This document shows positions 9,209 to 43,600 of a DNA stretch of 64,000 bases, piece after piece. Below the pieces are notes generated by a model. The model was not told where the DNA came from and ran no database searches. It saw only the letters and a program-made list of their open reading frames with translations. Source of the DNA: Macrostomum lignano (Eukaryota). Every line of letters begins with the position of its first letter. The first letter of the stretch is position 1. Both the position numbers and the translations under genes were made by a program. The DNA lies in the NCBI GenBank assembly GCA_002269645.1, contig NIVC01000265.1:1-64000 (forward strand), written 5' to 3'.

Positions 9209-11981
9209 GGATATATAATTTTTTTTGTAAACTCAAGTCAAAGTTCTAGTTTTTTATTCTTTGATTCTTTGACAGTTTCTTTCTTTCTTTCTTTGACATA
9301 GGTTCTTTGATAATTTTTTTATTCTTTGACATATACAGACTTAGGCCTACTTAGTTGGTGGCTCAGTGCTAACACAATAGGGGTAGGCCTAACCAACCCT
9401 AGCCATAGTTTAGAAGAAAACATGTATAATATATAATATTTATAATAGGCCTATCTATATATAGAGATTCTAGTTAATCTAGCAACAGGACAATCCAGCA
9501 AGAGATGATTTGGTGATAGTCAAAATGGTAATAGTCAATCTGAATCTGGCAACAAGGTGTAGTAAAAAGCTATTAAATCGGCTAGGGGCCTATTTGATAT
9601 TTAAACAGATTAGAGAGCTTTTATCTGTATAATTATAATTATTTGAAATTGTTATTTATAGTTAGGGCCTATTAATAATCATTATATTATTTTTTAATAA
9701 AATAAGGGTATATGTTAGAGTTCCATATATTGAAATTTAGTGGGTAGTGGGTTCAAAATCTTTGGGTTTTAATAGCGTTTTTTCTTAGGCCTATATTGAT
9801 AATACTGCTATAAAAAGGGAAAATACATTGAATAATTGATATGTTATTTATTTTTACTAAGGGACAGGACACACATTAGTTAGGCTATATAAGCAAATGC
9901 CAAACCACCTAGTAGTTCCACATTGTAGCTTAATAGAAATATCAATTGGAAGTTAGAACTAGATAGATAGCTCTAACAATTGTTACATATAAAAATTAGT
10001 ACTATTATAATATTAAAATATTTTGATATGATGTACTAAACTATATTAGAAGTATAGCCATAATGTTCAATATTTATTTTTATTACAAAGATACTATCCT
10101 AATATGAATTCTTTATATAAGCCTATATAAAATTAAAACTCATGTTAAATTTTGTTTGTATCTTAAATCTATATAAAATTTATAATATAAAATATATTGC
10201 TAGATTGTTTATTGCCATTGCCTATTTTGAATATTGTCAGATTATCTGTTGCTAGATTGTCTTGTTGCTATTTTGATTGTCACTAGATTGTCTATTGCCA
10301 AATCGTCTTATAGCTAGATTGACTAAAAGCCATAAGTACATTAGGATTTCCTGATTTACAACAAGGATATTTCCTAATTTTCAACCTATATCCACATATA
10401 TTTTTGGCATACTACATATATGATGCAGTGGACACATTGTGTCAATGACAATTTTTTTTTAATGTATAAATGAGGTCTCATAATTTTTTCTAGCATTAGA
10501 CTTGGGGTATACTAATAGGCCCACAATTTGAAGAATGGGTAACCAGTCCTTTTGGTTACAATTGTCAATTGTCAATGACTCAATATCTATACACATGTAC
10601 TATAGCTATAATATCTATTGTTTATAGAATAAAAAACCTTTGTCATTGTTTACTAACAAATTAGCACTGAAATCTTTAATCTTATTAAAGCATCTACTAC
10701 TGTATATACATTGTCAAAGTCTTAAAGGTAAATGAAATTAGGTCAAAGGTCAGAACAAAAACATCAATAAATATTTGCTAGATCAAAGCTTTTTATAGTT
10801 GTTAGCAATATACATTAATTCTAGATATTTGATTCTACTTTATTATTATTATACTAAAGCCAATTTTTTATATAGCAATAATTGTGTCCTTAGTCAAGTG
10901 CTACTTATAAAGCATTATATATGTGTGCATATGTTATTTCTTTATAAGTATTGCCTAAGCCTAGGCCTAAGGAACTTTTTATCATCTACACAAACTAGAA
11001 AATCTATAATATAGGTCTATTTTAGCTTTAGAACTTAGAACTTGAACTATCAGTTTAAAAATTATAGGCCTTATTTCTATTATTTTTGTGCTTATACAAT
11101 TTTTCACTAATTTCTATGGCAAAATTATTTGCCAACTAAGGAATATAAAATCTTTAGTTTTGCCAAGCCTAGGATTCTTTCAATCAGGATATCCCAGACT
11201 TAAAAAATCCTAGGATTCTCAAGATTGAGATATTCCAGACTTTAGGTTTACAAAGGTTTACAAAGAAATATAGGTTTAACTGTTTACAAATTCATCTTAT
11301 CTGGTTTTAAAGGGCCTTCAATAATAAAATTACAATAAAATAAAATATTTTACAAACAACAAACTAACAGTGAGCTGTAAATTAGAGTGTAATGTATGGG
11401 CTGGCCTAATAGATGTGCTTTTTTGTATGCCAGTATTAGCTTAGGAAAATCATACTTGATTATGATGTAACTTAGGGAATGATACCTTATAGAGATATGG
11501 TCCATGGTAATGATATCAGGGTAGAGGGGCTTTAAACCTCACCCCAGACAATATTTTCTGAATCTTTGTATCTTAACTCTTTTCTATTATGTTTAACAAA
11601 TATTTGTTTGTTTAGAAAAGTTATTGCTTAGTCTAGAAAATCTAGAAAAGTTATTGCTTAGTCTGCAATTAATTATTGATATTTCAATAGTTGTGGCTAA
11701 ATAAAACTAAGTATGTTAGAAAACTTTTCAATATTTTTCTAAACTGGATGATATTTATTTGATTTATTTCAAAGTAGAGTTAAAATAATTCTAGAGTCTG
11801 GGGATTTCTGCAACTGTTGTGGGTCTTAGAGGCTTTGCAATATGAAGTGATAAGATAGAGATAGGGGTTGCATTTTAATTGGTATTACATTTTTTTCAAA
11901 TTCATGTTCTGACATTGGTTCGACTTGATTAAAGTTAACTACTTTGGTTTAGTTATTTAGTTGAAGACTCCAGTTGTTTGC

Positions 11982-14900
11982 ATGGCTGAAGGCGCAGAGA
12001 GACTGGCCTCTTCTGTCCAGCAGCTGCAGCTTGTAGAGGACGCACCTCTGGATCAGCCATCCTTGGTCGATTGGTCAAAATTCTCGTTGCGTAATGCTGA
12101 ACTTTTGCGCACAGTTGGCACCGGCACCTTCGGCCGTGTCATGGTCATCCGAGAGAAAAACACTGATGAATATTTTGCGCTGAAAATTCTAGTTATTGAC
12201 GATGTGATGCGATTGAAGCAGGTGGAGCATGTCAAGAATGAGAAAGCTATATTGAACACCGTGAGTCACCCATTCCTAGTGAAGCTGTACTGGACCAATC
12301 ACGACATTAAGTTTCTCTACATGGTGTTCGAGTTTGTCTGCGGCGGTGAGATATTCTCCTATTTAAGAACATCGGGTACTTTTTCTAATGCTGCCACGCT
12401 GTTCTATGCTGCGGAGATTCTGTCAGCTATCATGTACCTGCACGACATGTCAGTTGTGTATCGGGATCTGAAGCCGGAGAATCTGCTACTTGATGCTCGG
12501 GGTCATTTGAAGATCACGGACTTTGGTTTCGCTAAAGTGCTGAAGGATAGGACTTATACTATGTGCGGCACGCCCGAGTATCTGGGTGAGTTCTGGTAGC
12601 CTATTTTTTTGAGTTTCCATCCCAAATCCCCGATCTCCCATTTTCTCTCAGTTTTAACCGGGGGGGGGGTTGATTCTGAAGCAGGAGACTTCAAAGTACA
12701 AGCTTTTTGTTTTGCGTTAAATATTTAGCAAAATTTTTTCGGTGACTAAGCCGGAGAATCGGCCTTGGTGTCGGCTACTGCAGTAGATGCAATTTGATCT
12801 AAGGAATGAAATTTTGAATAAGGGTGAAAATTTTTTGTTGAAAAGGAGTGACATTTTGCAGCTAAAAAGGGGTGAGATTTTAGAGTCGAGGGGCTGAGAT
12901 TGTAGAGTCGAGTGGCTGAGATTGTAGAGTCGAGGGGCTGAGATTGTAGAGTCGAGGGGCTGAGATTGTAGAGTCGAGGGGGTGAGATTTTAGAGTCCAG
13001 GGGCTGAGATTTTAGAGTCCAGGGGCTGAGATTGTAGAGTCGAGGGGCTGAGATTTTAGAGTCGAGTTGCTGAGATTTTAGAGTCGAGGGGCTGATATTT
13101 GAGAATCGATGGGTGAGAGTTGAGAATTGAAGGTGTGAAATTTGAGAGTCAAGGGGTGAGATTTTAGAGTTGAGGGTGAGATTTTAGAGTCAAGGGGTGA
13201 GATTTTAGAGTTGAAGGTAGATTTTAGAGTCGAGGGGTGAGATTTTAGAGTCGAGGGGTGAGATTTTAGAGTTGAGGGTAGATTTTAGAGTCGAGGGGTG
13301 AGATTTTAGAGTTGAGAATTGAAGGTGTGAAATTTGAGAGTCGAGGGGTGAGATTTTAGAGTTGAGAATTGAAGGTGTGAAATTTGAGAGTTGAGGGGTG
13401 AGATTTTAGTAGCCTAAAGCGGTGAGATTTTGAAATGAATTAAAATAAAATGGTAGTTAAAATTTCAGGCAAAAAGTTGAACCATGATTAAAACTATTCA
13501 ACTAAAAGACTGCCAGAATAATATTTCAGCAGGAGAAAATGCGCTGTATATTGTATGCGATGTACTTTAGAGAGTACATTGAGAACAAACTGAGATATAT
13601 TGAGATTGGGAAATTAGTCAGCTGTTTCTAATCACAGAATTCCAGGTAGTTGCCTTCATTCGGGGCTATCTAAGGTCAATTTGAGCTGGAATTCTTTAAG
13701 GTCAATATTTAATTCTGCGCGAGTGTCACAGAGCATTGCTAGTGAAAATGGTTAGGCTTATAAAATTGTCTTGTATCTGTCCCTGCCCTGCATTTTTAAC
13801 CTAATTTATTTGGTGTAAAATATTTAAACCCCCTAGTTTAAATTGGCTTATCTAAATAGGGCGCTCGCTCAATGGAAAAATGTAATTGCGTAAATGACCG
13901 GTCATGAAGAAGGTCATGCGAAGGACAATTGGTCATATAAAATAAGTCAGTTCTTTTGTTTATGACTGATCATAAAATTGGTCATAGAGTTGCAATCACG
14001 GATCAAAAATTGGTCATGTGGATGCAATGATCGATCATAAAATTGGTCAGATGGATGCAATGATCGATCATAAAATTGGTCAGATGGGTGCAATGACCAA
14101 TCATAAAATTGGTCAGATGGATGCAATGATCGATCATAAAATTGGTCAGATGGATGCAATGATCGATCATAAAATTGGTCAGATGGATGCAATGATCGAT
14201 CATAAAATTGGTCAGATGGATGCAATGACCGAGCATAAAATTGGTCATAGAGTTGCGATGACCAGTCATACCATAAGCCTCTATCACCCACCAAGCACCC
14301 CTCAAAATGACTGTCTTCGCAGCGCCCGAGATCATCATGGGCAAGGGCTACAATCGCGCAGTTGACTACTGGGCTCTCGGTGTTCTCATCTACGAGATGC
14401 TGGTTGGAACTCCGCCATTTTACGACGACAGTCCCATGCAGATCTATCAAAAAATTCTCAATGGCCGGTTTGAGTTTCCCGTCTCGGCTCAAGCAGATCC
14501 TCAGGTTGGTATGATTTTCCATTTTTTAAAACAGTTTTCATTCTGGTTTTATAAGTGATTTACAACAATGTTTTTCATACTCGTAGTTAGGAAGTCATTA
14601 ATAATTCAAGTTGATTCTATCTAGAAAACGTTTGCTTTTTACCTACTAATGTGTACCTACTATTTTTTTAAATTTTGTCTACTCTAAGTAGACAAAAGTA
14701 GACTTATAATTTTTTTTAAAGATTTAATTTAAAAAAGCGGTAACTTGTCTATTTAGTCTACTGTAAGTAAAAATAGAAACATTTTTAGAAAATTGTTTTT
14801 TTCAAAAACGGTAACTTGCCTTTTTAGTCTACTGTAAGTAGAAATATAAACATTTAACTGCTATTTACATCGCAGGCCCGCGATCTAGTCCGCAAACTGC

Positions 14901-15142
14901 TAGTCCAAGACCGAACTAAACGCCTTGGCAACATGAAAAGCGGCGCCGAGGACGTCCGCTCTCATCGCTGGTTCCGCGGCCTCGACTGGGACCAGGTCTA
15001 TTCGAGGAAACTGGCGCCGCCCATCGTGCCGCAGGTGCAGCACCCGGGCGACACCAGCTGCTACGACAAGTACGAGGAGCAGGACTGGAAACGGGTGCCC
15101 TCGTCCAGCGCCATCGGCCAGGAGTATTTTCGTGACTTCTAA
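11982..15142 (+). CDS. PRKX: PRKX-type cAMP-dependent protein kinase catalytic subunit, 350 aa; exons 11982-12585, 14323-14504, 14876-15142
   Basis: Motifs [34 protein letters not shown]|[31 protein letters not shown] and the terminal F-x-x-F are typical of PRKX rather than PKA-C alpha. GT-AG junctions are in phase (604+182+267=1053 nt). Confidence 0.92.
12868..13430. repeat. About 22-bp minisatellite (gagattttagagtcgaggggct) in PRKX intron 1
   Basis: Read directly. Confidence 0.93.
13965..14255. repeat. 33-bp minisatellite (gatgcaatgatcgatcataaaattggtcagatg) in PRKX intron 1
   Basis: Read directly; source of the [11 protein letters not shown] pseudo-ORFs. Confidence 0.93.
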
Positions 15143-16680: not shown

Positions 16681-18911
16681 TTAATCGATATTGACAGCCT
16701 TGAGTTGTGGTCTTATGCTCGCTTGTCTTGGCGTGCCTGCGAAAAGCAGAAGTTTATTGATTCTCTGTGTGAGTTCATAACTCGATGTGGGATCAAAACC
16801 CTGAAAAATCTCATCTCAAATCGATGGAAGTCCTACAAAATTTCATCTCAAATCAATCAAAACCCTACAAAATCTCACCTCAAATCGATCAAAATCTTAC
16901 AAAATCTCATCTCAAAGTGATCAAAGTCCTACAGAATCTCATCTCAAATCAATCAAAACCCTACAAAATCTCACCTCAAATCGATCAAAATCTTACAAAA
17001 TCTCATCTCAAATCGATCAAAATCTTACAAAATCTCATCGCAAATTAATCAAAACCCTACAAAATCTTATCCCAAACTGATCAATTTGGCTCACCTCCAG
17101 CGACCTCTGCCACTCGACCCTGTAGTAGCTCCACCGCGGCTTGTCGTTGATGTTGCAGAGCTGCAGGCAGCGCACTGGTTGCTGGCCAAACTGGCTGTAC
17201 ATCAGCGGCATCCACAGATCGTCTTGGATTTTCAGGCCTCCTGAGAATTTTGAGTTTTTATGTCCCTGTTAGATTTCAGTTGACACCTGTTAGATTTTGA
17301 TTGTCACATGTTAGGTTTTGGTCGTCACCTGTTAGATTTTGGTTGTCACTTGTTAGATTTTTATTGTTACCTGTTAAATTTTGGTTTTCACCTGTTAGAT
17401 TTTGGTTGTCACCTGTTAGGTTTTGGTTGACCCCTGTTAGATTTTGATTGTCACCTGTTAAATTTTGATTGCCACCTGTTAGATTTTGGTTGTCACATGT
17501 TAGATTTTGAATGTCACATGTTAGATTTTGAATGTCACATGTTAGATTTTGAATGTCGCATGTTAGATTTTGATTGTCACCTGTTAGATTTTGGTTGACA
17601 CCTGTTAGATTTTGATTGTCATCCGTTAAATTTTGATTGCCACCTGTTAAATTTTGGTTTTAACCTGTTAGATTTTGGTTGACACCTATTAGATTTTGGT
17701 GGTATCTGTTAGATTTTGGTGGTATCTGTTAGATTTTGGTGGTATCTGTTAGATTTTGGTGGTATCTGTTAGATTTTGCGGGCACCAGTTAGTCTCAGCT
17801 GTAAACCTGAGCCCAAATCCTCAGCCCTATGCACTCACTCGCAACCTGATCTTCGTTATACTTAAACACCGTGATCTGGCCAACGAAGCTTTTCTGCGGC
17901 AGCACGTGGACCCCAGACGCCAACAGGGCGCTTCGAATTGTGGCTGAAATATGAAAGTGATAATTATTTGACAGGTACCTTATTAGATAATTATGTAACA
18001 GGTAGCTCCAATGTTTAATTATAATGATCGCTACTAACTGGACACATCTTTGAGAGTTCGCAGAGCGTCATCGTTGAACACCTGCATGTACAGTTCCGTC
18101 TCGTTCAGCAGTCCGAGTCCTTGGAAGGTCAGCACGAGGCCGTCTTGTACTAAACGGCTGATTTTGTCGTGGTAGAGATCGAGGATGTGCTTCACCCTGA
18201 GGAGCAACACGCGAATGACATCAGACGCAATAGAGAGGCGGTTTTTTGAGGTCTGAGCTTCAGGGGCGATTTTGGTTCAGGTTGGAGCTTCAGGGGCGAT
18301 TTTGGTTCAGGTTGGAGCTTCAGGGGCGATTTTGGTTCAGGTTGGAGCTTCAGGGGCGATTTTGGCTCAGGTTGGAGCTTCAGGGGCGATTTTGGTTCAG
18401 GTTGGAGCTTCAGGGGCGATTTTGCTTCAGGTTGGAGCTTCAGGGGCGATTTTGATTCAGGTTGGAGCTTCAGGGGCGATTTTGCTTCAGGTTGGAGCTT
18501 CAGGGGCGATTTTGATTCAGGTTGGAGCTTCAGGGGCGATTTTGATTCAGGTTGGAGCTTCAGGGGCGATTTTGGTTCAGGTTGGAGCTTCAGGACATGT
18601 ACATGTATTCCGACGTTACTGATCTATTAAATATTGAAGCGATCAACATAGTCACAAGATGTTTAGGAAGTGACCATGAATTATAATTACTTTTCCATCT
18701 CCTCGTCAGTTCGAATGCACAGATTTGCTACGAGCAGGTGAGTTGAGTACAGATCAACCATGGCTTTGCGCAGATCGTGTTTCTGATAGAACGCATTGGT
18801 GTAGATTGTCTCCTGCAGTTTGCGCATCGCGTCCACAATCTGCAGTTTCGTGGTATCGAATAATTGTTTTTTTGGCAGATTGTTTGATAGACCTTGTACT
18901 GTCTGACTTAG
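16681..18911 (-). CDS. AKAP7/AKAP18-like 2H-phosphoesterase (2'-5' RNA ligase-like) domain protein, at least 249 aa, catalytic motifs degenerate; exons 18911-18691, 18196-18039, 17943-17839, 17240-17095, 16800-16681; 5' end unresolved
   Basis: Five short exons join with GT-AG sites and consistent phases (2,1,1,0). Translation LRKAMVDLYSTHLLV...LVLTFQGLGLL...KSFVGQITVFK...QFGQQPVRCLQLC...SYY is colinear with the AKAP7 central domain as I recall it (LAKAMV.DGSFHITL...LTLPFQGIGTF...RSFKPHLTFMK...RFGEEILYRIDLC...GYY). Confidence 0.8.
16800..17075. repeat. About 32-bp minisatellite (aaatcgatcaaaatcttacaaaatctcatctc), intronic
   Basis: Read directly. Confidence 0.9.
17265..17778. repeat. 21-bp minisatellite (ctgttagattttggttgtcac), intronic
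   Basis: Read directly. Confidence 0.93.
18255..18593. repeat. 30-bp minisatellite (ggttggagcttcaggggcgattttggttca), intronic
   Basis: Read directly; about 11 copies. Confidence 0.95.
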
Positions 18912-18944
18912 CTATGCATGTCTGTGAGAGTCTTCATAATAGCA

Positions 18945-19432
18945 TTTCTATAGTGTAATATCTGTGTTGAGTCTATAGAATAACATCTCTATAGTGTAAT
19001 ATCTGTGTTGAGTCTACAGAATAGCATCTCTATAGTGTAATATCTGTGTTGAGTCTACAGAATAGCATCTCTATAGTGTAATATCTGTGTTGAGTCTACA
19101 GAATAGCATCTCTATAGTGTAATATCTGTGACAGTCTACAGAATAGCATCTCTATAGTGTAATATCTGTGTTGAGTCTACAGAATAGCATCTCTATAGTG
19201 TAATATCTGTGTTGAGTCTACAGAATAGCATCTCTATAGTGTAATATCTGTGACAGTCTACAGAATAGCATCTCTATAGTGTAATATCAGTGACAGTTTA
19301 CAGAATAGCATCTCTATAGTGTAATATCTGTGACAGTCTACAGAATAGCATCTCTATAGTGTAATATCTGTGACAGTCTACAGAATAGCATCTCTATAGT
19401 GTAATATCTGTGACAGTCTACAGAATAACATC
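18945..19432. repeat. 40-41-bp minisatellite (agaatagcatctctatagtgtaatatctgtgttgagtctac)
   Basis: Read directly; begins just beyond the acceptor at 18912. Confidence 0.95.
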
Positions 19433-20475
19433 TATGATACATGTAGTTGTGACAATCTATAGAACGTTACATCACAAATACAATACGCTCGTACATATAC
19501 AAAAACAGCTGTTGTGACTGCACTGTCTATAAAAGTAGCGTTTCAGTAATTTATTAAGCTCTAAATATTAAAGCTCAAATTTAAGTGAGCTACTGCCACA
19601 CATTACCTGTTGATTGTTGACTGGAAAGCAAATAATATGAGTTGTCTCTCGCATTGTTAACTAATTAATTAATTAGTTAGTTAAATTGCCTGTTGGATTT
19701 GAACCTGTGAACTTGTACAGTTTGAGAGCTACGCAACTTTCTGCAACCAGGTGTGCTTGCAAGCATTTAAGCTGGGCTGCACCTTCTTATCGCTGAGAAA
19801 CTTTTCTACCCAAACCCGTCTGGCCCCGGCAGTTGCTAGGGGCCACCATTCTTACAGATTGCATTCTATACAGCTTCTATATAGTCATTTCCATTTCTGC
19901 AGAGCTGCATAAAATGGATGGAAATTGCACTTAGTAAGGCATTTTCTCTGTCAGCTCTTTACCTCTCCCGACGGGCGCTCGGCCTCGCCCTCAGCCTCAG
20001 TCTGCATCATGCCTTTATAAAAGTTTTTGCCAATTTTAGCTGCAGAAATTGTGATGGGGCTTTTTTATACATGTATACCCTGCCGTTCCGGACTAGACTG
20101 AAAAAGTGCATCCCAAAATAGATTGTTATATTAGTATAGAAGCTATTTTGAATTCTGTAACCCATAAGAAAGTTTTAAATACGTGTAATTAATTTAAATC
20201 TACGCAACAAAAAAGGTACCATGCACACTCTTTCGTACAGCACTACTCGTTGGCCATCAGCAGTAGTAAAGCCAGGAACATATTTTACTTATAGTTTTAC
20301 AATCGAAACGATTTCAGGGCGTTATTCGCCGTGAAAATCTTGTGAGAATATTCTCACGCCTTGCTTAAACCGTATATTATTCAGAACACTGCCATTAGAT
20401 GGAGTCACTATGTGTAACAAAAAGTAGAACTCAACACTTTGAGCAAAACATATAATCAGACTCAAATCTGAAACC

Positions 20476-23400
20476 ATGGGCGCCAGATCGACAAAAGCTA
20501 AAATACTTCGCTGGTTGGTTTTTATGGGCGGCGTCAGCGCTTTGATCTCCGGTATTGGATCCTTGATCTTGAATTTCTGGCGTATGGGAGAGTGCAGCAC
20601 CAATTCTGCATGCAAGTGGCACCAGGGAATGCCGTGGACTTATCACAGCTACGTCGGTGAGTCTGCGCTAGTGAGCAAATATAATGTTCAGGGTGAAGAT
20701 TGCAGCCTCAGTCCTGATTATTCAGGGTGAAGATTGCAGCCTCAGTCCTGATTATTCAGGGTGAAGATTGTAGCCTCGAGTCCTGATTATTCAGGGTGAA
20801 GATTGCAGCCTCAGTCCTGATTATTCAGGGTGAAGATTGCAGCCTCAGTCCTGATTATTCAGGGTGAAGATTGCAGCCTCAGTCCTGATTATTCAGGGTG
20901 AAGATTGTAGCCTCACTCCTGATTATTCAGGGTGAAGATTGTAGCCTCAGTCCTGATTATTCAGGGTGAAGATTGTAGCCTCAGTCCTGATTAATCAGGG
21001 TGAAGATTGTAGCCTCAGTCCTGATTATTCAGGGTGAAGATTGTAGCCTCAGTCCTGATTATTCAGGGTGAAGATTGCAGCCTCAGTCCTGATTATTCAG
21101 GGTGAAGATTGCAGCCTCACTCCTGATTATTCAGGGTGAAGATTGCAGCCTCAGTCCTGATTATTCAGGGTGAAGATTGTAGCCTCAGTCCTGATTATTC
21201 AGGGTGAAGATTGTAGCCTCAGTCCTGATTATTCAGGGTGAAGATTGTAGCCTCAGTCCTGATTATTCAGGGTGAAGATTGTAGCCTCACTCCTGATTAT
21301 TCAGGGTGAAGATTGCAGCCTCACTCCTGATTATTCAGGGTGAAGATTGCAGCCTCACTCCTGATTATTCAGGGTGAAGATTGCAGCCTCAGTCCTGATT
21401 ATTCAGGGTGAAGATTGCAGCCTCAGTCCTGATTATTCAGGGTGAAGATTGTAGCCTCAGTCCTGATTATTCAGGGTGAAGATTGTAGCCTCAGTCCTGA
21501 TTATTCAGGGTGAAGATTGTAGCCTCAGTCCTGATTATTCAGGGTGAAGATTGTAGCCTCAGTCCTGATTATTCAGGGTGAAGATTGTAGCCTCAGTCCT
21601 GATTATTCAGGGTGAAGATTGTAGCCTCAGTCCTGAATATTCAGGGTGAAGATTGTAGCCTCAGTCCTGATTATTCAGGGTGAAGATTGTAGCCTCAGTC
21701 CTGATTATTCAGGGTGAAGATTGTAGCCTCAGTCCTGATTATTCAGGGTGAAGATTGTAGCCTCAGTCCTGAATATTCAGGGTGAAGATTGTAGCCTCAG
21801 TCCTGATTATTCAGGGTGAAGATTGCAGCCTCAGTCCTGATTATTCAGGGTAAAGATTTTAGGCTCAGTCCTGATTATTCAGGGTGAAGATTGCAGCCTC
21901 AGTCCTGATTATTCAGGGTGAAGATTGTAGCCTCAGTCCTGATTATTCAGGGTGAAGATTGTAGCCTTGAGTCCTGATTATTCAGGGTGAGATTGTAGCC
22001 TCAGTCCTGAATATTCAGGGTGAAGATTGTAGCCTCAGTCCTGATTATTCAGGGTGAAGATTGTAGCCTCAGTCCTGAATATTCAGGGTGAAGATTGTAG
22101 CCTCAGTCCTGAATATTCAGGGTGAAGATTGTAGCCTCAGTCCTGATTATTCAGGGTGAAGATTGTAGCCTCAGTCCTGAATATTCAGGGTGAAGATTGT
22201 AGCCTCACTCCTGATTATTCAGGGTGAAGATTGTAGCCTCAGTCCTGATTATTCAGGGTGAAGATTGCAGCCTCAGTCCTGATTATTCAGGGTGAAGATT
22301 GTAGCCTCAGTCCTGATTATTCAGGGTGAAGATTGTAGCCTCACTCCTGATTATTCAGGGTGAAGATTGTAGCCTCAGTCCTGATTATTCAGGGTGAAGA
22401 TTGTAGCCTCAGTCCTGATTATTCAGGGTGAAGATTGTAGCCTCACTCCTGATTATTCAGGGTGAAGATTGTAGCCTCAGTCCTGAATATTCAGGGTGAA
22501 GATTGCAGCCTCAGTCCTGATTATTCAGGGTGAAGATTGTAGCCTCAGTCCTGATTATTCAGGGTGAAGATTGCAGCCTCAGTCCTGATTATTCAGGGTG
22601 AAGATTGTAGCCTCAGTCATGAATATTCAGGGTGAAGATTGCAGCCTCAGTCCTGATTATTCAGGGTAAAGATTTTAGGCTCAGTCCTGAATATTCAGGG
22701 TGAAGATTGCAGCCTCAGTCCTGACAATATTCAGGGTCAAGATTGCGGCCTCAGTCCTGACAATATTCAGGGTCAAGATTGCGGCCTCAGTCCTGACAAT
22801 ATTCAGGGTCAAGATTGCAGCCTCAATCCTGACAATATTCAGGGTGAAGATTGCAGGCTCAGACCTGAGTATTCAGGATGAAGTTTGTAGTCTTAGTCAT
22901 GAATATTCAGGATGAAGTTTGTAGTCTTAGTCATGAATATTCAGGATTAAGATTGTAGTCTTAGTCCTGAATATTCAGGATGAAGTTTGTAGTCTTAGTC
23001 CTGAATATTCAGGATGAAGTTTGTAGTCTTAGTCATGAATATTCAGGATGAAGTTTGTAGTCTTAGTCATGAACATTCAGGATGAAGTTTGTAGTCTTAG
23101 TCATGAATATTCAGGATGAAGTTTGTAGTCTTAGTCATGAATATTCAGAATGAAGACTAACAACCAAAGTTTGTAAAACTCTACCAAGAATTCTGGTTAG
23201 TTTGGTAGACTCTCCAAATATTCAATTTTTATTGCTTGCAGCTTAATAATAATGATGAAGAGCAACCGCAAATAAATAATTGCAATCAATCCGCAGCATT
23301 CCCATTGGCGGTGCTGATATTTGCTGTCCTGTCCCTGCTGGTAGTCCTGGTCGTGATAATCATTGTCCTAGTAGAGCTGTGCACTCCAAGAGTTAAACTC

Positions 23401-23628: not shown

Positions 23629-24374
23629 CTTTTTTCTGACTAACAAACAATATTAAACTGCCGAGTGATCAACATGCTACTCATAACAGTAATATAACAA
23701 GATAAAGCAACAATTCTAAATGATAAAAATTCACTCAAAAATTGCTGAAATTAAAACTAACACTTGATCACCATTTAGATTGTGTTCGATATGTACACGG
23801 GCGATGCAATTCCTAAAATAAATATTCAACTACTTTTTTCGTATTTTTGTTTTTCATATTAATTTTCTAAAAACACATAGAGTAAAGAACACGGATTATT
23901 GCAAGTAATATAGTGGATTTAATGTTGATTTTTTTTCAATAGACGTATATATTTACAGCGATTGATGCTTGAAAATTTGTGTCAAAAAGTTTGATAGACA
24001 TGAAAATGGAGAACATTTTACTTGTGTGTGTATATATATATATATATATGAAACATTATTTATTTTATTATAATAAATGCCCTAGAAAAATACAAAGACC
24101 GAATATAAAAAATATTGTTGAACTAGCTTATAAAAAACTGACTTTTTAAAAATCATATTCAGCTGCCACTACTATAAGACATCCAAATGCGGTGTTAATA
24201 AAATAAAATTCAATTTAGTTTAGGAAGTGTAAGTTTAACAAACGGGCATTTGGCAAATGCACAGCTATAAATTGGCTAAAATGTAGAGATTAAAACATGG
24301 GAAAGGCCAGAGAGATAAGAGATAAGAGAAAGAGAGACTGAGATAAGATCTGAAACTGAGATGAGAGGCCTTAG

Positions 24375-26122
24375 ACAGAGATTAGAGATATCAAATCAAG
24401 ATAAGAGATATCAGACTGCAATCAGAGATCTCAGACTAAGAAGAGAGATCTCAGACTAAGATGAGAGATGTCTGTCAGACTAAGATAAGATATGTCAGAC
24501 TAAGATGAGAGATCTCAGACTAAGAAGAGAGATCTCAGACTAAGATGAGAGATGTCTGTCAGACTAAGATAAGAGATGTCAGACTAAGATGAGAGATCTC
24601 AGACTAAGATAAGAGATTTCAGACTAAGATGAGAGATCTCAGACTAAGATGATACATGTCAGACTAAGATGAGAGATCTCAGACTAAGATGAGAGATGTC
24701 TGTCAGACTAAGATAAGAGATGTCAGACTAAGATGAGAGATCTCAGACTAAGATAAGAGATTTCAGACTAAGATGAGAGATCTCAGACTAAGATGATATA
24801 TGTCAGACTAAGATGAGAGATCTCAGACTAAGAAGAGAGATCTCAGACTAAGATGAGAGATGTCTGTCAGACTAAGATAAGAGATGTCAGACTAAGATGA
24901 GAGATGTTAGACTAAGATGAGAGATCTCAGACTAAGATGAGAGATCTCAGACTAAGATGAGAGATGTCAGACTAAGATGAGAGATCTCAGACTAAGAAGA
25001 GAGATCTCAGACTAAGATGAGAGATGTCTGTCAGACTAAGATAAGAGATGTCAGACTAAGATGAGAGATCTCAGACTAAGATAAGAGATTTCAGACTAAG
25101 ATGAGAGATCTCAGACTAAGATGATACATGTCAGACTAAGATGAGAGATCTCAGACTAAGATGAGAGATGTCTGTCAGACTAAGATAAGAGATGTCAGAC
25201 TAAGATGAGAGATCTCAGACTAAGAAGAGAGATCTCAGACTAAGATGAGAGATGTCTGTCAGACTAAGATAAGAGATGTCAGACTAAGATGAGAGATGTT
25301 AGACTAAGAAGAGAGATCTCAGACTAAGATGAGAGATGTCTGTCAGACTAAGATAAGAGATGTCAGACTAAGATGAGAGATGTCAGACTAAGATAAGAGA
25401 TGTCAGACTAAGATGAGAGATCTCAGACTAAGATAAGAGATTTCAGACTAAGATGAGAGATCTCAGACTAAGATAAGAGATTTCAGACTAAGATGAGAGA
25501 TCTCAGACTAAGATGATACATGTCAGACTAAGATGAGAGATCTCAGACTAAGAAGAGAGATCTCAGACTAAGATGAGAGATGTCTGTCAGACTAAGATAA
25601 GAGATGTCAGACTAAGATGAGAGATGTTAGACTAAGATGAGAGATCTCAGACTAAGATGAGAGATCTCAGACTAAGATGAGAGATGTCGACTAAGATGAG
25701 AGATCTCAGACTAAGATGAGAGATCTCAGACTAAGATGAGAGATCTCAGACTAAGATGAGAGATCTCAGACTAAGATGAGAGATCTCAGACTAAGAAGAG
25801 AGATCTCAGACTAAGATGAGAGATGTCTGTCAGACTAAGATAAGAGATGTCAGACTAAGATAAGAGATGTCAGACTAAGATGAGAGATCTCAGACTAAGA
25901 TGAGAGATCTCAGACTAAGATGATACATGTCAGACTAAGATGAGAGATCTCAGACTAAGATGAGAGATGTCAGACTAAGATGAGAGATCTCAGACTAAGA
26001 TGATACATGTCAGACTAAGATGAGAGATCTCAGACTAAGAAGAGAGATCTCAGACTAAGAAGAGAGATCTCAGACTAAGATGAGAGATCTCAGACTAAGA
26101 TGAGAGATGTCAGACTAAGATA
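24375..26122. repeat. 20-bp minisatellite (cagactaagatgagagatct) with higher-order variant blocks
   Basis: Read directly. Confidence 0.96.
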
Positions 26123-26516
26123 AGAGATCTGGGAGAGATAAAAGCCGCCAAAGTGAGATTGTAAACAGCTCTCACAAGAGACGCAGCTAAAAACTTACGG
26201 ACGCAACACAAAAGTAAGAGTACATTTTTGCAGTTCAAAACAGATGTAAAAAGGCAGACTAATTAATTAGAAATTTTATACAGAACTAAACAGATACAAT
26301 AATATTGCTAAACAGTTCACACATGAAGTAAGCAACAAGCTACTGACAACAAGTAATACGGTATATGGCACTAATTATTCTTCTTTGCAAAAAAGAATGG
26401 TAAAATGTCCTAATTTCTACTCACGCGACTGAGTAGGCTAGTGAGGACATGGATTTTTCTTTTTAGAATTTTATAATAATTGATAAGTATTGATGGGTGA
26501 TAATTACGCATAATTG

Positions 26517-28302
26517 CTAGCGATTATCTTGAATTTGACGCCGAACCACTTCGCTAGGCGGAGTGTCCCACAGAGCCGAGCTACCGCGGCGACTCAGCCA
26601 GCACCGCCTCCTCCTCCGGCTATGGCCATCATCATCATTATTATTAATAGAATCCTCATCATTAACGTCATCTGTTGAATCGCTTTTTGTCGCAACATCT
26701 TCGAATGCTCGGAACAGGCTGTCGGCCAGTTTGCTTCCGGCATCCACTGGGCGGAACACGTGCCACCAGCGAAGGCCTTCGACAGCCTGGCGAGAGAACA
26801 TCCAGTGCAGATTGTCCTCGGTCACCCAGTCGGCCAGAGCATCGTCCGCGAATTCTGGCCGGCTGAAATCCGGCTCGTCCTTTTCGTCTTCATAGTCTGA
26901 TAAATCTTCATCGGGCTCTGCTTCAGGTGGCTTGGCGTCTTCTGCTTTTGAGGCTTGGTCTTCGATCTGTTGCTGCTGCTGCTGCTGCAACTGGCTGGGA
27001 TGATGATTCTCGTCCTGCTCAAACTCAATTGTGACGTCGCTGATTGACAGGTCGAGTTGGGGAGGCAGCGGCGTCGGTGGCGGCGGAGGCTGAGACTCCG
27101 GCTGCAGCTGATTGGAGCTCTGCAGGGCCTGCGGAGGTTTTTCGGGGCAGATAGAATTGGTAGATTGATATCTAGCAGGGCAGATAGATTTGGTAGATTG
27201 ATATCTAGCGGGGCAGATAGATTTGGTAGATTGATATCTAGCGGGGCAGATAGATTTGGTAGATTGATATATAGCAGAGCAGATAGATTTGGTAGATTGA
27301 TATCTAGCGGGGCAGATAGATTTGGTAGATTGATATCTAGCAGGGCAGATAGATTTGGTAGATTGATATCTAGCAGGGCAGATAGATTTGGTAGATTGAT
27401 ATCTAGCGGGGCAGATAGATTTGGTAGATTGATATCTAGCAGGGCAGATAGATTTGGTAGATTGATATCTAGCAGGGCAGATAGATTTGGTAGATTGATA
27501 TCTAGCGGGGCAGATAGATTTGGTAGATTGATATCTAGCAGGGCAGATAGATTTGGTAGATTGATATCTAGCGGGGCAGATAGATTTGGTAGATTGATAT
27601 ATAGCAGGGCAGATAGATTTGGTAGATTGATATCTAGCGGGGCAGATAGATTTGGTAGATTGAAATCTAGCAGGGCAGATAGATTTGGTAGATTGATATA
27701 TAGCAGGGCAGATAGATTTTGTAGATTTATATCTAGCAGGGCAGATATATTTGGTAGATTGATATCTAGCAGGGCAGATAGATTTAGTAAATTGATATCT
27801 AGCAGGGCAGATAGATGATGAAACGAAAGTCAGGGAATTGGTATATTCTTACCAAGCTTCCACAACTATCAAGCAGCGGCTTGCGCAGTTCAACAATCTG
27901 CTCCAATTTCTGCATCTGCTGCGGCGATGCAGCACTAAAAACAGCCTTGACAGCGGTGGACTGCTCGCAGCAGACCTGTCGATGCTTTGCTGTCCGCGGA
28001 GTTTTCAAATTAATTTTCTTTGTCTGAGTTTGAGGCGGCTGGACAGCATGGGCTGCGGCAGCGCCAGACTTCAGTCGCTGCAGCCGCTCGCGCTGCAGTC
28101 GCTGCGCCGTCTCAAGCACGCGTCTTCTGCGCGCCTCAGCCTGAGCCGCTTTCTCAGCTCTTAACCGGTTTGCCTCGTCGCGTTGGCGTTGAAGACGCTC
28201 GGCGTCGGCGGCCAGTTTGGCTTCCAGCTGTTGCTGACGACGGCGCAACTGTTCAGCAGCATGACGCTGCCACTGCTGCTGCTGACGACGCATGAAATTC
28301 AT
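26517..28302 (-). CDS. Uncharacterised coiled-coil, polyQ and acidic protein, about 353 aa; exons 28302-27853, 27128-26517
   Basis: Donor TTG|GTAAGA and acceptor ctccgcag|GCC are both phase 0. N-terminal R/Q/E-rich coiled coil; Trp-rich block DWVTEDNLHWMFSRQAVEGLRWWHVFRP. May have further 5' exons (in-frame AG at 28315). Confidence 0.7.
27145..27815. repeat. 33-bp minisatellite (gcagatagatttggtagattgatatctagcagg), intronic
   Basis: Read directly; source of the RADRFGRLISS pseudo-ORF. Confidence 0.96.
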
Positions 28303-38700: not shown

Positions 38701-40614
38701 CCAATAAAGCATATTAAACAAATATCAGCTAACTGCCTAGTGTTTTAATTATATGCATAGCAGCTGTCCACCATGTGTTTTAATTGTATGCGTAGACATA
38801 ATAATTGTTGCATCTTTTAAATATTAAAAAATAATATAGATTGTCTATATAGGCCCTATGTATTATATAACTAATATAACAGGCCTTGCATGAGATGCTA
38901 GAGACAAAAGTGACTATAGTTTTGGAACAAAGCAATTTTTGTATTTAAATAATCATCTTCTATAATTGAAATAGTATATTTTATATGAGATGCTCATTTA
39001 TAAAAAAGATATGGTTCTATAACTGCTTGAAATTAGCAAAATTGACTAGAAATGCTATAGTTTTGGAACACTATCATTTTAATGCAATTTTTGTAATTAA
39101 ATGATTCTCATCCAAAATGGATATAATACATAAGGTATTAAGATATATAAGTGCTAAAAGGGTTATTTGTTACATAAAGTCAATCTCTGGAAATCACTTC
39201 AAATGGAACAAACTTATGGTAGGCCTGAGTTAATTTTAAGACTCAAAGTTTTGTATAATTGTATCAAAATAGTTAAAGATTGTTTGTGTCAAATTCTAAG
39301 AAGGTTAGTTAAACTAAAGTGGTGCTATAGAAAATTTAGTGAAAAATTCACAGTTTTTCTAGGTAAGAAGACTTAGATTTAGAAAATTTTAAGGTAGTTT
39401 AAGACATTCTCAATAATAAGTTTAGGATAGATGCAAAATTTGGTATAATATAGTTGAGCAGTTTGGAAGTACATAGCAAATAAATTTATACATAAATATA
39501 TACAAATAGTATACATTCATTTTTATTGGTAGAGTAGAGATTATATAAATAAAAGCATATTTTTTAATTATAAACTTCTATAAATTTAAATTTATCCATT
39601 GTCATTGTTTCTTTTTTATGCTGCATTCATAGATGGCCTGCTATCCCTTTCTAGTCCATTATCCCAAGTGTATAGTGGCCTAAGTCTGGCATAAATGATA
39701 AAAGTTCATCAATTTTCTTCCATCATTATTCCAAGCATGAAATGAACACTATGGCTCTAGTATCAAATAGATTATAGCTCATATATTAAAAATATTGCTA
39801 CCTTCTATGTCAAAGTGTGCATGAATTCATTCAATATTAATGATATGGCTTATTAATACTTTCACTGTCTCCAATGTGAGACACATTGTATATTATGGAT
39901 ATGGGTGCTTTGTTTATAAGCTCTAATATTATTTTAGATATGCTAGCCATAGACATGTCTATACAACTATAAGTATAAAGCTAGGCAATATTACAGATAT
40001 ACTAATAGCTGCCATTTCTATAAGTTTGTGCATTCTAGACATGATTGCCATATCTAAGTGTGTTATTTGTTTTATATAAAAGGATTATTTGGTAGGCTTC
40101 CCTAAGAATGCAGTTAGAAATTAGATCAAGTTTGGTCTCCATTGAGGTTACTATATCAACTTAGTTATCTCAATGGAGACCCTATTTGAATCTACATTGT
40201 GGCTAATATAATATACTTTTTTCATTTCTTAACTAATCTATTGTTTTAGATATACTTGAAAGTTTAACAAAAGTATCACTTTTTACTTTTAAAACAGGTT
40301 AGTTTGTTGGCCCCATAAATTAAGTTGATTAAACTTTGTTTTAAAAGCCTTAACTTTGAAATAAAAAAGTTAAGATCACTATTTTTTCAGGCTAGGAAAG
40401 AATTAGTTAAAAAATATATGCATAAAAGCCATCTAAAAACTTTAAAAGTACACATTTTACTTGGATACAAGCTAAATAGTAAATTGTATTTCATTATCAA
40501 AGATACGCTACAACATAGAACTTTTCTTTTTGATGTGAATTTGCAAACAAAGACGTTAGATCATTTCAAGGAATTCATTGGTTTTGCTTACAAAGGAAGA
40601 CAGTACAAGACTTG

Positions 40615-43600
40615 ATGGCAATGGTCAATCTACTTGGCCTAGCCCTGCTTTTAATTGCAACTGCTACTGCTGCTGATCCATGCCCTAAAAGCAGGGGTTG
40701 GCTTTCAGTTGGTAGCACTGGAGATTGTGTATTTCTATCTGACAGCTTCTTGGGAAGCTACAGACAGGCTGAGGCAAAATGTCGCAGTCTTGGCGATAAC
40801 AAAGATTTCCATCTGACATTCCTGCGAGATACTTTGTTTGTCGAACAACTGGAAGCAGCACTGAATACTCAGTTAAATGTTACCAACATCAACAGCACTT
40901 ACTGGATTGCAGCGCATCGAAACCTGGTTAATAATCGGGTAATCTGGCTTAACGATACTTATATCGATGGAAGTCTGTCTCCACTAAGACTAGTCTTTGA
41001 CCCTTCGCCTACTGATGCTAAAGGTTTCGGCTATCTAATACTGCAAGAATCCATTGAGGGGAATAGCACCACTAACAGTAGTAGCAACAGTAGCACACCA
41101 ACACGTGCTAGCCTACAGATGAGATTCGATAAATCCGAGTCCACTCCAAGACGCGCACTTTGCGCCCGACAGGCTGTGAATCCGGCAGTTCCCAGGTCCA
41201 ATTTGCAAATTACAGGCGGTTACTGTCCTAAAATTGCTGGCAAAACTAAGGCAACTGTGCATTATATCTCTGATCGTTGCTACGCTGTTGTTCCCGGAAT
41301 CGCTGATGATGCATGCGCTAGTCTTGGCTCAAATTATCTCCCAGCAATGCTGAATGATTGGACTGCTCAACAGGTTGCTACAGTGTTGGCTGATAAGCAT
41401 CCACTGGTTTTTGGTTTACGCTTCGTGCCTGGTCGAGGTTATTTGTGGCACAATCAGTCTGAGAAGGCTTCTGTTCTGCTCACTGCATGGTCAGCCAATC
41501 AGCCTGCGACTGACAAGGCTTGCGTTGCTATTGGCAACGGTACAGCTACATGGCGCAGTCTGGATTGCAATGCAAATTCCGCTAGTTTATACAGCCTCTG
41601 TCATACGCCTGCCAGTGTTGATGCTAGTAACCCGTTCGATTCGAAGTTGACCAACTTTCTTAATAGTGGCGTCAGTTGTCTGCCTGGATTTGTTAATTTT
41701 GATTCTTCTTGCTACTACCTTGGCGATACCCCAATTGCTGGTAATTCTTCAATAACCGACTGGTGCTCGGAAAAGTACAATGCTAGCGCTGTTTGGTTTG
41801 ATAGACCAGCTCAGCTAGCTTTAGTATCGTTGCTTGGACTGCAGCCAAATCGTTATTACGCTATTGATAAACCTGTTTCATTTGATGCAGGTTGGCTGTC
41901 TCTACCAGATAGCCTGCCACAGGCTAATGGCTCCTGTCTAGCCTTTTCAACAGGTACTGGCGGCTTGATTAACCAAAATAGCAGTGCTCAGTGCGCCAAT
42001 CTTTTACCCGCTTGTCGCTATCCAAAGCCTCAGTCGGAAACGAGGGCTATTAGTCATTCTCCAACTGCGGCTACAACTGCCATTGTAGAGACAACATGTC
42101 CGCGGGGTTTTATCTTAGCCGACAATAAATGTCTAGCAACAAGTTCGAACTATTCCGATTGGCACAACGCCAACATCGCCTGCCAAGGATTATTTCCATC
42201 AGCTTTTGTTGCTAGCTTACACTCGAGCATTAAGGCCTCCGTTGTCGCAAAGTTGCTACCCACTTCAAACACTTATGGAGCCTGGCTTGGTCTCAGCATT
42301 CGTCGTTCGTCTGGGCTTCTCTATCCGACGTGGACCGATTCTACTCAGTTTGATTATTATCCACCGCATTCAGCTAATAGCATTAAGATACAATCATCCT
42401 TTCAATGCGCCTACGTTTTATCTGACAGTAGTAAAGGCTTTATATGGCATCTGACAAATGACTGCAACGCTGCAAAGAGGCTTGTACTATGTCAGGCTGC
42501 GCCAAATGTTACTAATAAATACTCGACTCCGGTTCAATCGACTCTATCCGCTGCCATGACAACTATGCCACCCGTGAAAACCGCCACGCCAAAAGTTCTT
42601 AGTTTTGCTGAATCATGCCAGAGCATTAATGGTCAGAGACTATCGGACGATGGTAGACGGTGTTACTCGTATCGGGTGCTAACTAACAAAACTTATAACT
42701 GGTTTGAAGCTTTTGCTGCCTGTCAAAAAATCGACTCAAGCAATGCTAGCAATTTGGCTTCTATCGAATCGGAGTCTGAGAACAACTTTGTTAGAAAGTT
42801 GCATCTAGCCCATGGTTTAGTTTGGCTTGGCTTGAACGAAGCTTACGAGCAAGTTCCAGATAAATTGACAACTTGGTCAGATGGTACTCCGGTTCAGTAC
42901 GTTAACTTTGACAATAGCAAACCAGATCTTTACGGTCAGTGCGGCGCGATGATGACGCAACTTATAAAGAGTTCAGAATATTCGTCATCTAAGAATCTAT
43001 TACGCTCGGGACTTTGGTATGATCGAGATTGTGGAGAGTCTTTGTCGGTAGTGTGTAAAACTTTAGTGTCAAAGTTGCCCGATCAGGATGCTTCTACTTC
43101 TCAGCCGTCGACTGGTAATAGTTCGAAGGTTGAGCGTTACTGTCCAGCAGACTGGCTAGCAACTCCAGATAACACCGCTTGTTATCGCCTGCTACCTAAG
43201 CCGGCTAGATTTGCCGATGCTCGCTCCAGCTGTCAGAGTCTGGACGGCGATTTAGCGTCCTATCAGACTTCTGGTCAGCACGATTTTCTAGTTAGCCTAG
43301 TTGCTAGCCTAGGTAGAAGAGCCGGCTTAGTCTGGCTTGGTTTGCAATGGGCCGGTAGCGCCTTTAATTGGCTGGACGGTTCCAAGGTGAACTTTCTGGT
43401 GTGGCCTCACGCGCCATCTATACCGTCAACGCATTGTTTAGCTACTAGATACCATCCATTGCTAAGCAAATCTGGCTATCATTTAGCCGAGCTGTGCAGC
43501 TTGCCTTTGCCGGCTCTGTGCCGTAGGCCGCTTACTGTGATACCGCCGTCTTCTCCGCAGCCTAAGATATGCAAGGATGGCTATGTAGCCTTCAATGGAA

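What the first reader, a model, noticed from the sequence alone, without database searches (positions are those of the whole stretch)
16681..18911. Hidden AKAP7/AKAP18-like 2H-phosphoesterase gene with both catalytic motifs broken
Invisible to the ORF track: five exons of 105-221 nt among minisatellites join into at least 249 aa colinear with the AKAP7 central domain. 2H phosphoesterases need two H-x-T/S motifs. Here the first is H-L-L (STHLLV, Thr lost) and the second is Q-I-T (GQITV, His lost). The frame is intact, so it is probably a maintained pseudo-enzyme, for example a nucleotide-binding or scaffold module rather than a 2',5'-phosphodiesterase. Family assignment is from remembered sequence.
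Basis: partly seen in the sequence, partly recalled or inferred. Interest (0 to 1): 0.7.

Follow-up and report, generated by a model that had tools for sequence, protein, structure and literature searches.

The report
Flatworm AKAP7-like gene, catalytic motifs lost
This is an already annotated gene of the flatworm Macrostomum lignano whose small protein has the AKAP7-type "two-histidine" phosphoesterase fold but has lost half of each catalytic motif and still looks selectively maintained, so it is probably a non-catalytic relative of an enzyme: a modest curiosity, not a hidden gene.

Summary
The core of the finding holds, but the gene model needed correcting and the gene is not hidden.

- **Identity.** The window is Macrostomum lignano contig NIVC01000265.1. 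The gene is the RNA-seq-based GenBank model BOX15_Mlig029747g1 (PAA86767.1, 209 aa), on the minus strand.
- **Exons.** The first runs 72 nt past the true acceptor and misses an upstream 48-nt exon that encodes beta-strand 1. The last uses an acceptor inside a minisatellite, whereas the annotated last exon is 24 nt.
- **Family.** Pfam AKAP7_NLS scores 66.6 bits (cut-off 24.4). The AlphaFold2 model has pLDDT 94 and matches the human AKAP18 central domain at TM 0.87.
- **Motifs.** Motif 1 is H-L-L and motif 2 is Q-I-T in all three genomic copies. Among 119 aligned homologues, 118 have H-x-T in motif 1 and all 119 have H-x-T/S in motif 2.
- **Divergence.** The protein departs from the family residue at 14 of 29 conserved columns, against a median of 2.
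- **Selection.** The three copies differ by 6 synonymous and 3 non-synonymous changes (omega about 0.14, P = 0.005).
- **Not an AKAP.** It has no PKA-binding helix and no NLS.

Most likely it is a maintained, catalytically dead 2H-fold protein. Its actual role is unknown and untested.

The parts
19607..19654 (-). Coding exon 1b (48 nt): MRETTHIICFPVNNQQ, start codon at 19654-19652. It encodes beta-strand 1 of the domain.
   Evidence: It is part of the CDS that equals PAA86767.1. It raises the Pfam score from 50.7 to 66.6 bits.
19963..20010 (-). Alternative first coding exon 1a (48 nt): MMQTEAEGEAERPSGE, donor GT at 19962-19961. The older UniProt/WormBase-type models use it in place of exon 1b, and that isoform would lack beta-strand 1.
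   Evidence: Sequence read. Proteins P0004 and P0005. Pfam 50.7 bits.
18691..18839 (-). Coding exon 2 (149 nt), acceptor ctgcag|ATTGTG, donor AAAA|gtaatt. It holds degenerate motif 1, S-T-H50-L51-L52-V (H50-L52 = 18740-18732).
18039..18196 (-). Coding exon 3 (158 nt).
17839..17943 (-). Coding exon 4 (105 nt). It holds degenerate motif 2, G140-Q141-I142-T143 (Q141-T143 = 17878-17870).
17095..17240 (-). Coding exon 5 (146 nt). It covers the end of the 2H domain (…YYRVEWQRSLE).
16713..16736 (-). Coding exon 6 (24 nt): ARQDKRA plus stop (TAA at 16715-16713), acceptor ttctgcttttcgcag|GCACGC.
18921..19433 (.). Intron 1 minisatellite: 41-bp unit, 12.7 copies.
   Evidence: The same array is present in the g2 and g3 copies with other copy numbers.
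18255..18594 (.). Intron 2 minisatellite: 30-bp unit, 11.3 copies.
17261..17778 (.). Intron 4 minisatellite: 21-bp unit, 24.9 copies.
16791..17084 (.). Intron 5 minisatellite: 32-bp unit, 9.2 copies.

Best explanation
The locus is the Macrostomum lignano gene BOX15_Mlig029747g1. It has six coding exons on the minus strand (CDS 19654-16713). It encodes a 209-residue protein that is nothing but one AKAP7/AKAP18-type 2H (two-histidine) phosphoesterase-fold domain.

The domain descends from the metazoan 'AKAP7-like phosphoesterase' clade, and its active site has been remodelled:
- Motif 1 keeps His50 but has Leu where the phosphate-binding Thr should be.
- Motif 2 keeps Thr143 but has Gly-Gln where the family has Pro-His.

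2H enzymes use both histidines for transesterification, and single second-motif His substitutions kill AKAP7 and its relatives. The protein is therefore most likely unable to cleave 2',5'- or cyclic-phosphate bonds.

It is nevertheless transcribed, folds confidently, is intact in all three genomic copies, and evolves under purifying selection. So it most likely works as a non-catalytic module that uses the conserved cleft or surface to bind something (a nucleotide, an RNA end or a protein) rather than to hydrolyse it.

What is shown: gene structure, homology, fold, motif state, its uniqueness in the family, and constraint between copies. What is inferred: loss of activity, and any binding or scaffold role.
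For: **Gene and organism**
- The window equals NIVC01000265.1, and the corrected CDS equals PAA86767.1.
- The GenBank models derive from StringTie/TACO RNA-seq assemblies plus TransDecoder (PMC5730564).

**Homology and fold**
- Pfam AKAP7_NLS 66.6 bits, E 3.8e-18.
- PDB sequence hits to AKAP7 gamma and AKAP18 delta.
- AF2 pLDDT 94.
- Foldseek top hits 5jj2, 3j4q, 2vfy and 2vfk at TM 0.85-0.87, followed by trypanosomatid mitoribosomal mS64, ASCC1 and LigT.

**Motifs**
- HMMER and MAFFT both align H50 and Q141 to the two catalytic His columns.
- 118 of 119 homologues have HxT in motif 1, and 119 of 119 have HxT/S in motif 2.
- 31 further family members are all intact wherever the column is present.
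- The M. lignano protein differs at 14 of 29 columns that are at least 80% conserved. The median for other members is 2.
- The codons are identical in three independently assembled copies, so this is not a sequencing error.

**Constraint**
- g1 against g3: 6 synonymous and 3 non-synonymous differences, dS 0.045, dN 0.006, omega 0.14. The binomial P for 3 or fewer non-synonymous changes out of 9 is 0.005.
- Unique intron 3 differs by 5.3%, about the same as dS.

**Catalytic requirement**
- AKAP7 H93A;H185R and H185R are inactive (PMC4161237).
- NS4b H182R, NS2 H126R and VP3 H718A are inactive (PMC8406329).
Against: - No biochemical data exist, and one residue of each motif (His50, Thr143) survives. 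A reduced or altered activity cannot be excluded.
- The selection test rests on only nine substitutions between very recent copies (about 1.4% CDS divergence), which could also be homogenised by gene conversion.
- No orthologue from another flatworm was found. The age of the loss and long-term constraint are therefore unknown.
- Transcription is taken from the provenance of the annotation, not from reads I could inspect. No expression data for the gene were found in paper texts or supplements.
- The proposed binding or scaffold role has no direct support.
Confidence: 0.72

Rival explanations
1. It is still an enzyme. The remodelled site (His50, Thr143, Gln141 and perhaps other residues) supports a different or weaker phosphoesterase, cyclic phosphodiesterase or ligase-type chemistry.
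For: - One residue of each motif is retained, and the fold and cleft are predicted with high confidence.
- Purifying selection fits any function, including catalysis.
Against: - Every one of 119+31 relatives keeps the second-motif His.
- Single substitutions of that His abolish activity in four family members.
- The neighbouring conserved Pro140 and several other cleft-strand residues have also changed.
- The only nearby extra His (H131) is Tyr in copy g3, so it is not a fixed replacement.
Confidence: 0.13
2. It is a decaying relic: a gene that lost its function recently and is drifting, with frames intact only because too little time has passed.
For: - It is strongly divergent from the family, at 14 of 29 conserved columns and a Pfam score of 66.6 bits against 127-162 for relatives.
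- The copies are young (dS 0.015-0.045), so intact frames alone prove little.
Against: - Non-synonymous changes are about seven-fold under-represented relative to synonymous changes and to intron divergence.
- Replacing 14 conserved positions implies a long history after the loss, yet there is no stop or frameshift in any of three copies.
- AF2 predicts a compact, confident fold.
- The gene passed an expression-filtered transcript annotation.
Confidence: 0.08
3. The reader's longer model, or another isoform, is the real product. Candidates are use of the 16800 acceptor giving a 40-residue tail, or use of exon 1a instead of, or in front of, exon 1b.
For: - The 16800 acceptor is a canonical AG in phase 0, and the tail frame is open in all three copies.
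- Older public models use exon 1a (P0004 and P0005).
- Exon 1a would also read in frame into exon 1b through a possible acceptor 6 nt upstream of the ATG. This is my reading and is unverified.
Against: - The RNA-seq-derived GenBank model uses 16736 and exon 1b in all three copies.
- The 16800 site is a variant minisatellite unit.
- All 4 substitutions in the tail are non-synonymous.
- An exon-1a-only isoform lacks a core beta-strand.
- None of this changes the domain or the motif states.
Confidence: 0.07

Closest known systems
Vertebrate AKAP7/AKAP18 gamma/delta central domain (PDB 5JJ2, 2VFK, 2VFY); a 2',5'-phosphodiesterase that binds 5'-AMP
   Same: - It is the best sequence and fold match: E 2e-8, TM 0.87, rmsd 2.0 A over about 203 residues.
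- It belongs to the same Pfam family, PF10469, and is colinear over the whole domain.
   Different: - Only 19-23% identical.
- Lacks Thr of motif 1 and His of motif 2.
- Lacks the N-terminal NLS region and the C-terminal PKA RI/RII-binding helix, so it is not an anchoring protein.
- Stand-alone domain of 209 aa.
Invertebrate and other 'AKAP7-like phosphoesterase domain-containing proteins' (for example Rotaria, Tubulanus, Lingula, Batillaria, Ramazzottius, Acanthaster, Desmophyllum)
   Same: - These are the nearest relatives by full-library HMMER search, at E 2e-13 and weaker and 21-30% identity.
- Several are likewise short, single-domain proteins.
   Different: - All keep both H-x-T motifs.
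- They score 127-162 bits against PF10469, compared with 66.6 bits here.
Kinetoplastid mitoribosomal protein mS64 (AKAP7_NLS domain; PDB 6HIV/6HIW, 7AOR, 7ANE)
   Same: - Same fold, TM 0.74-0.81.
- It is a precedent for this domain serving as a structural, presumably non-enzymatic, component.
   Different: - mS64 still carries both H-x-T motifs in the alignment.
- It has extra N-terminal sequence.
- Nothing suggests that the flatworm protein is ribosomal.
ASCC1 phosphodiesterase/ligase domain (PDB 8TLY, 8TUK) and bacterial/archaeal LigT
   Same: 2H fold, TM 0.78-0.81 for ASCC1 and 0.54-0.67 for the LigT-type proteins.
   Different: - ASCC1 has an N-terminal KH domain, which is absent here.
- They are more distant in both sequence and structure than AKAP7.
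Viral AKAP7-derived 2',5'-PDEs with degraded motifs (an inactive rotavirus G PDE with a second-motif Thr substitution; a viral PDE with a degraded second motif)
   Same: They are precedents for natural loss of a catalytic-motif residue in this fold with little structural change (PMC10835031).
   Different: Those are viral proteins judged non-functional. Here a cellular gene has changes in both motifs and shows signs of constraint.

Membership tests
Pfam PF10469 AKAP7_NLS (AKAP7 2'5' RNA ligase-like domain): homology | Profile-HMM score above the curated gathering threshold, over most of the profile | tested here: met
66.6 bits against 24.4, E 3.8e-18, profile positions 2-203 of 208.
2H phosphoesterase superfamily: fold | Bilobed alpha+beta 2H fold, superposable on solved members | tested here: met
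   AF2 pLDDT 94 and pTM 0.88. Foldseek TM 0.87 and rmsd 2.0 A to 5jj2, with further hits to ASCC1, LigT, plant CPDase and Usb1. This is a predicted structure, not an experimental one.
2H phosphoesterase superfamily: catalytic signature | Two H-x-T/S motifs (His plus Thr/Ser in each) | tested here: not met
   Motif 1 is H50-L-L52 and motif 2 is Q141-I-T143. The family shows 118/119 and 119/119 intact, and a further 31 members are intact wherever the column is present. No Thr or Ser lies within four residues after His50, under any plausible alignment.
2H phosphoesterase superfamily: activity | Metal-independent cleavage of 2',5'- or cyclic phosphodiester bonds | not testable with these tools
   Needs recombinant protein and substrates. 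Loss of activity is inferred from His mutants of relatives.
A-kinase anchoring protein 7/18 (AKAP function) | C-terminal amphipathic PKA RI/RII-binding helix (Pfam AKAP7_RIRII_bdg) | tested here: not met
   No Pfam hit other than AKAP7_NLS at E<=1, apart from a sub-threshold HTH_Card1. The protein ends within about 13 residues of the domain.
A-kinase anchoring protein 7/18 (AKAP function) | N-terminal basic nuclear localisation region preceding the domain | tested here: not met
   The domain starts at residue 5 of 209. Alternative exon 1a is acidic (MMQTEAEGEAERPSGE), not basic.
ASCC1 | KH domain N-terminal to the 2H domain | tested here: not met
   No KH hit. The nearest relatives lack KH too.

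The most novel reading that the evidence does not exclude
The flatworm has turned an AKAP7-type 2',5'-phosphodiesterase into a dedicated non-catalytic 'reader' or adaptor. It would be the first cellular pseudo-enzyme of the AKAP7 clade, retaining nucleotide or RNA-end binding without hydrolysis. It might be tied to cAMP/PKA signalling, since a PKA catalytic-subunit gene is its immediate convergent neighbour in all three copies.
Probability: 0.1. Interest if true: 0.5.

Novelty: new variant of a known kind. Interest (0 to 1): 0.3.

Why it matters
**Possible value.** 2H phosphoesterases of the AKAP7 clade are the cellular source of the viral 2',5'-phosphodiesterases that oppose the OAS-RNase L pathway. 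The non-catalytic roles of the AKAP7 central domain are poorly understood. A naturally 'dead' but maintained member would be a clean natural experiment on what the fold does besides catalysis, in an animal where RNAi and transgenesis work.

**Limits.** It is one small gene in one lineage, it is already annotated, no function is attached to it, and pseudo-enzymes are common across enzyme families. The practical value is small. The result mainly adds a curated note to an existing automatic annotation that calls the protein a 'phosphoesterase domain-containing protein' without noting that its catalytic signature is gone.

Tried and rejected
Rejected at both ends.
- **Close orthologues.** The word-indexed search found only the species' own cluster. 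The profile search returned 20 proteins and no other Macrostomum or flatworm entry. The full-library HMMER search found nothing closer than 30% identity. Twenty cluster look-ups named no platyhelminth.
- **Catalytically intact paralogues in M. lignano.** Their presence could not be tested, because no M. lignano proteome or genome can be searched here beyond the three loci.
- **Transcript contigs.** The exact-protein look-ups returned only the GenBank genome contigs, so splice junctions rest on the provenance of the annotation.
- **Expression or phenotype data.** 'Mlig029747' occurs in no paper text and in none of the held supplements of three M. lignano papers.
- **Literature on 2H pseudo-enzymes.** No paper pairs '2H phosphoesterase' with 'pseudoenzyme'.
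- **PKA-C adjacency as conserved microsynteny.** There is no kinase next to the AKAP7-like genes of Actinia, Nematostella or a third contig.
- **A compensating His.** H131 is polymorphic (Tyr in g3), and no other lineage-specific His is evident.
- **RNA genes.** The window has no tRNA and no Rfam hit.
Full report
**What is in the sequence**

The region 16.6-20.0 kb is AT-rich eukaryotic DNA in which short GC-richer blocks alternate with tandem arrays. Translating the minus strand gives open segments that join through canonical AG/GT sites with matching phases.

It holds three Macrostomum lignano proteins of 209 aa, BOX15_Mlig029747g1, g2 and g3, which UniProt names 'A-kinase anchor protein 7-like phosphoesterase domain-containing protein'. 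Looking up where PAA86767.1 is encoded returned contig NIVC01000265.1 of assembly GCA_002269645.1. Its bases 6713-29654 are identical to the same window coordinates. The window is therefore that contig, and the gene is already annotated.

**Corrected gene model**

The annotated protein starts MRETTHIICFPVNNQQ. Exon 2 begins at 18839 (ctgcag|ATTGTG), not at 18911.

The annotated C-terminus, ARQDKRA-stop, is a 24-nt exon at 16736-16713 behind a pyrimidine-rich acceptor.

That is what non-coding sequence looks like.

The six exons (48, 149, 158, 105, 146 and 24 nt) give 630 nt and translate exactly to PAA86767.1. According to the genome paper, the GenBank models come from a genome-guided RNA-seq assembly (StringTie and TACO, plus mapped de novo transcripts, with ORFs called by TransDecoder). 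The junctions therefore reflect transcripts (PMC5730564). I could not inspect reads myself.

An alternative first exon at 20010-19963 (MMQTEAEGEAERPSGE) is used by older UniProt models. That isoform lacks beta-strand 1 and scores 50.7 rather than 66.6 bits against Pfam.

**Family and fold**

- The 209-aa protein matches Pfam AKAP7_NLS (PF10469) at 66.6 bits, against a cut-off of 24.4, with E 3.8e-18 over profile positions 2-203 of 208. No other domain is detected.
- Against PDB sequences the best hit is the human AKAP7 gamma central domain (5jj2, E 2e-8). Next come kinetoplastid mitoribosomal mS64 and AKAP18 delta.
- An AlphaFold2 model built on a 30-sequence alignment has mean pLDDT 94 and pTM 0.88.
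- Foldseek places the model on the AKAP18 central domain (5jj2, TM 0.87, rmsd 2.0 A, E 1.6e-16). After that come mS64, ASCC1, archaeal and bacterial LigT, the viral 2',5'-PDEs, plant CPDase and Usb1.

**The two motifs**

HMMER pairwise alignments and a MAFFT alignment of the query with 119 homologue domains agree.

| Motif | M. lignano | Family |
|---|---|---|
| 1 | S-T-H50-L-L52-V | x-x-H-Φ-T-Φ |
| 2 | V-G140-Q141-I-T143-V | x-P-H-Φ-T-Φ |

Each of the 119 homologues represents a 50%-identity cluster from a search of 1.84 billion proteins. Of these, 118 have H-x-T in motif 1 (one has H-x-N), and all 119 have H-x-T/S in motif 2. The flatworm protein is the only one with H-x-L or with Q-x-T. Thirty-one further family members fetched later are also intact wherever the column is present.

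The gap near motif 1 could be placed differently, but no placement puts a Thr or Ser after His50. The codons (CAC CTG CTC and CAG ATC ACG) are identical in the three separately assembled copies, which rules out a base-calling error.

The remodelling goes beyond the motifs. The protein departs from the family residue at 14 of the 29 columns that are at least 80% conserved. These include the N-terminal P-N-x-F, V55, F96 and P140. The median for other members is 2, and the maximum is 12, in a truncated sequence. Its Pfam score is less than half that of its relatives, which score 127-162 bits.

**Is it maintained?**

The three copies (g1 in the window, g2 in L003, g3 in L001) sit in the same gene order. 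They have the same six exons and the same intronic minisatellites with different copy numbers. The genome paper describes substantial recent duplication in the sequenced DV1 line.

- g1 against g3 shows 6 synonymous and 3 non-synonymous differences: dS 0.045, dN 0.006, omega 0.14.
- The other two pairs give the same ratio.
- With 78% of sites non-synonymous, 3 or fewer non-synonymous changes out of 9 has binomial P = 0.005.
- The only repeat-free intron (95 nt) differs by 5.3% between g1 and g3, similar to dS.

This is real but thin evidence for purifying selection. There are nine substitutions in all, the copies are young, and gene conversion is not excluded.

**Mechanism**

In this family both histidines are required.

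- Mouse AKAP7 H93A;H185R does not cleave 2-5A, and H185R alone abolishes function (PMC4161237).
- Single second-motif His mutants of three other family members are inactive (PMC8406329).

A protein with Gln at that position, and Leu in place of the first motif's Thr, is therefore most likely catalytically dead. That is an inference. It has a confident fold, intact frames and signs of constraint. The best reading is a non-catalytic 2H-fold module that binds rather than cleaves. The ligand or partner is unknown.

It is not an AKAP. There is no RII-binding helix and no NLS, and the protein is essentially the bare domain. Kinetoplastid mS64 shows that the fold can serve structurally, although it keeps its motifs.

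**Relatives and novelty**

The nearest relatives are 'AKAP7-like' proteins of a lizard, coelacanth, hagfish, echinoderms, a hemichordate, corals and anemones, rotifers, a nemertean, a brachiopod, a snail and a tardigrade. They are 21-30% identical and all have intact motifs. No flatworm orthologue was identified, so the age of the loss is unknown.

No paper mentions the gene. None pairs 2H phosphoesterases with the pseudo-enzyme concept. Degraded motifs have been reported in some viral homologues (PMC10835031).

The gene itself is known. The observation that its catalytic signature is gone appears to be new, but it is a variant of a familiar theme.

**Verdict**

- Observation: partly confirmed. 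The middle exons and the motif states are right, and both ends of the model are wrong.
- Interpretation: supported.
- Interest: modest, 0.3.

Noticed in passing
window 11982-15142 (+); first long exon ORF 11961-12596: The gene immediately downstream, convergent with its 3' end about 1.6 kb from the AKAP7-like stop, encodes a 350-aa kinase. Its N-terminal exon matches PKA catalytic subunits (E 8e-59 to 1e-57) far better than PKG (1e-43). So an 'A-kinase anchor-like' domain gene sits next to an A-kinase catalytic-subunit gene in all three paralogous loci. The adjacency is absent around the AKAP7-like genes of Actinia, Nematostella and a third contig, so it is probably coincidence.
   Followed up: partly
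window 16791-17084, 17261-17778, 18255-18594, 18921-19433; L001 and L003 introns: Four of the five introns are each dominated by a different minisatellite (32-, 21-, 30- and 41-bp units). The same arrays occur in the g2 and g3 copies with very different copy numbers. Intron lengths in g1/g2/g3 are 767/2310/17026, 494/1736/501, 95/95/95, 598/1070/1512 and 358/380/946 nt, while the exons stay 94-100% identical.
   Followed up: partly
whole window, e.g. 586-1950, 20687-23156, 24335-26130, 45977-47354, 58892-61575: The window carries about twenty long minisatellite arrays with units of roughly 12-46 bp and up to about 118 copies. This fits the high tandem-repeat content reported for this genome (PMC5730564).
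   Followed up: no
window 19963-20010 (-): Older UniProt models use alternative first coding exon 1a (MMQTEAEGEAERPSGE). It would also read in frame into exon 1b if a weak acceptor 6 nt upstream of the exon-1b ATG (…aattag|TTAACAATG) were used. Alternatively, that AG could be a spliced-leader acceptor. Neither possibility was checked against reads.
   Followed up: no
L001 11197-13537 (-), inside the 17-kb intron 1 of copy g3: A called 608-aa gene on the opposite strand lies inside the greatly expanded first intron of the g3 copy. No Pfam hit is on record for it. It may be an inserted element.
   Followed up: no
window 40612-43974 (+) and 51492-53408 (+): There are two long uninterrupted ORFs. 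One is 1120 aa with three C-type lectin domains. The other is 638 aa with a calponin-homology domain plus a RhoGEF domain.
   Followed up: partly
window 26520-27848 (-): A 443-aa open frame has an N-terminal half that is a translated 33-bp minisatellite (…STKSICPARYQ… repeats, array 27145-27816). Its C-terminal 177 aa is acidic with no Pfam hit. It overlaps an annotated 345-aa gene.
   Followed up: no
L004 10001-11164, L005 10001-10663, L006 10001-11665: The cnidarian-type AKAP7-like genes are intronless, because gene span equals protein length times three. The flatworm gene has five introns.
   Followed up: no
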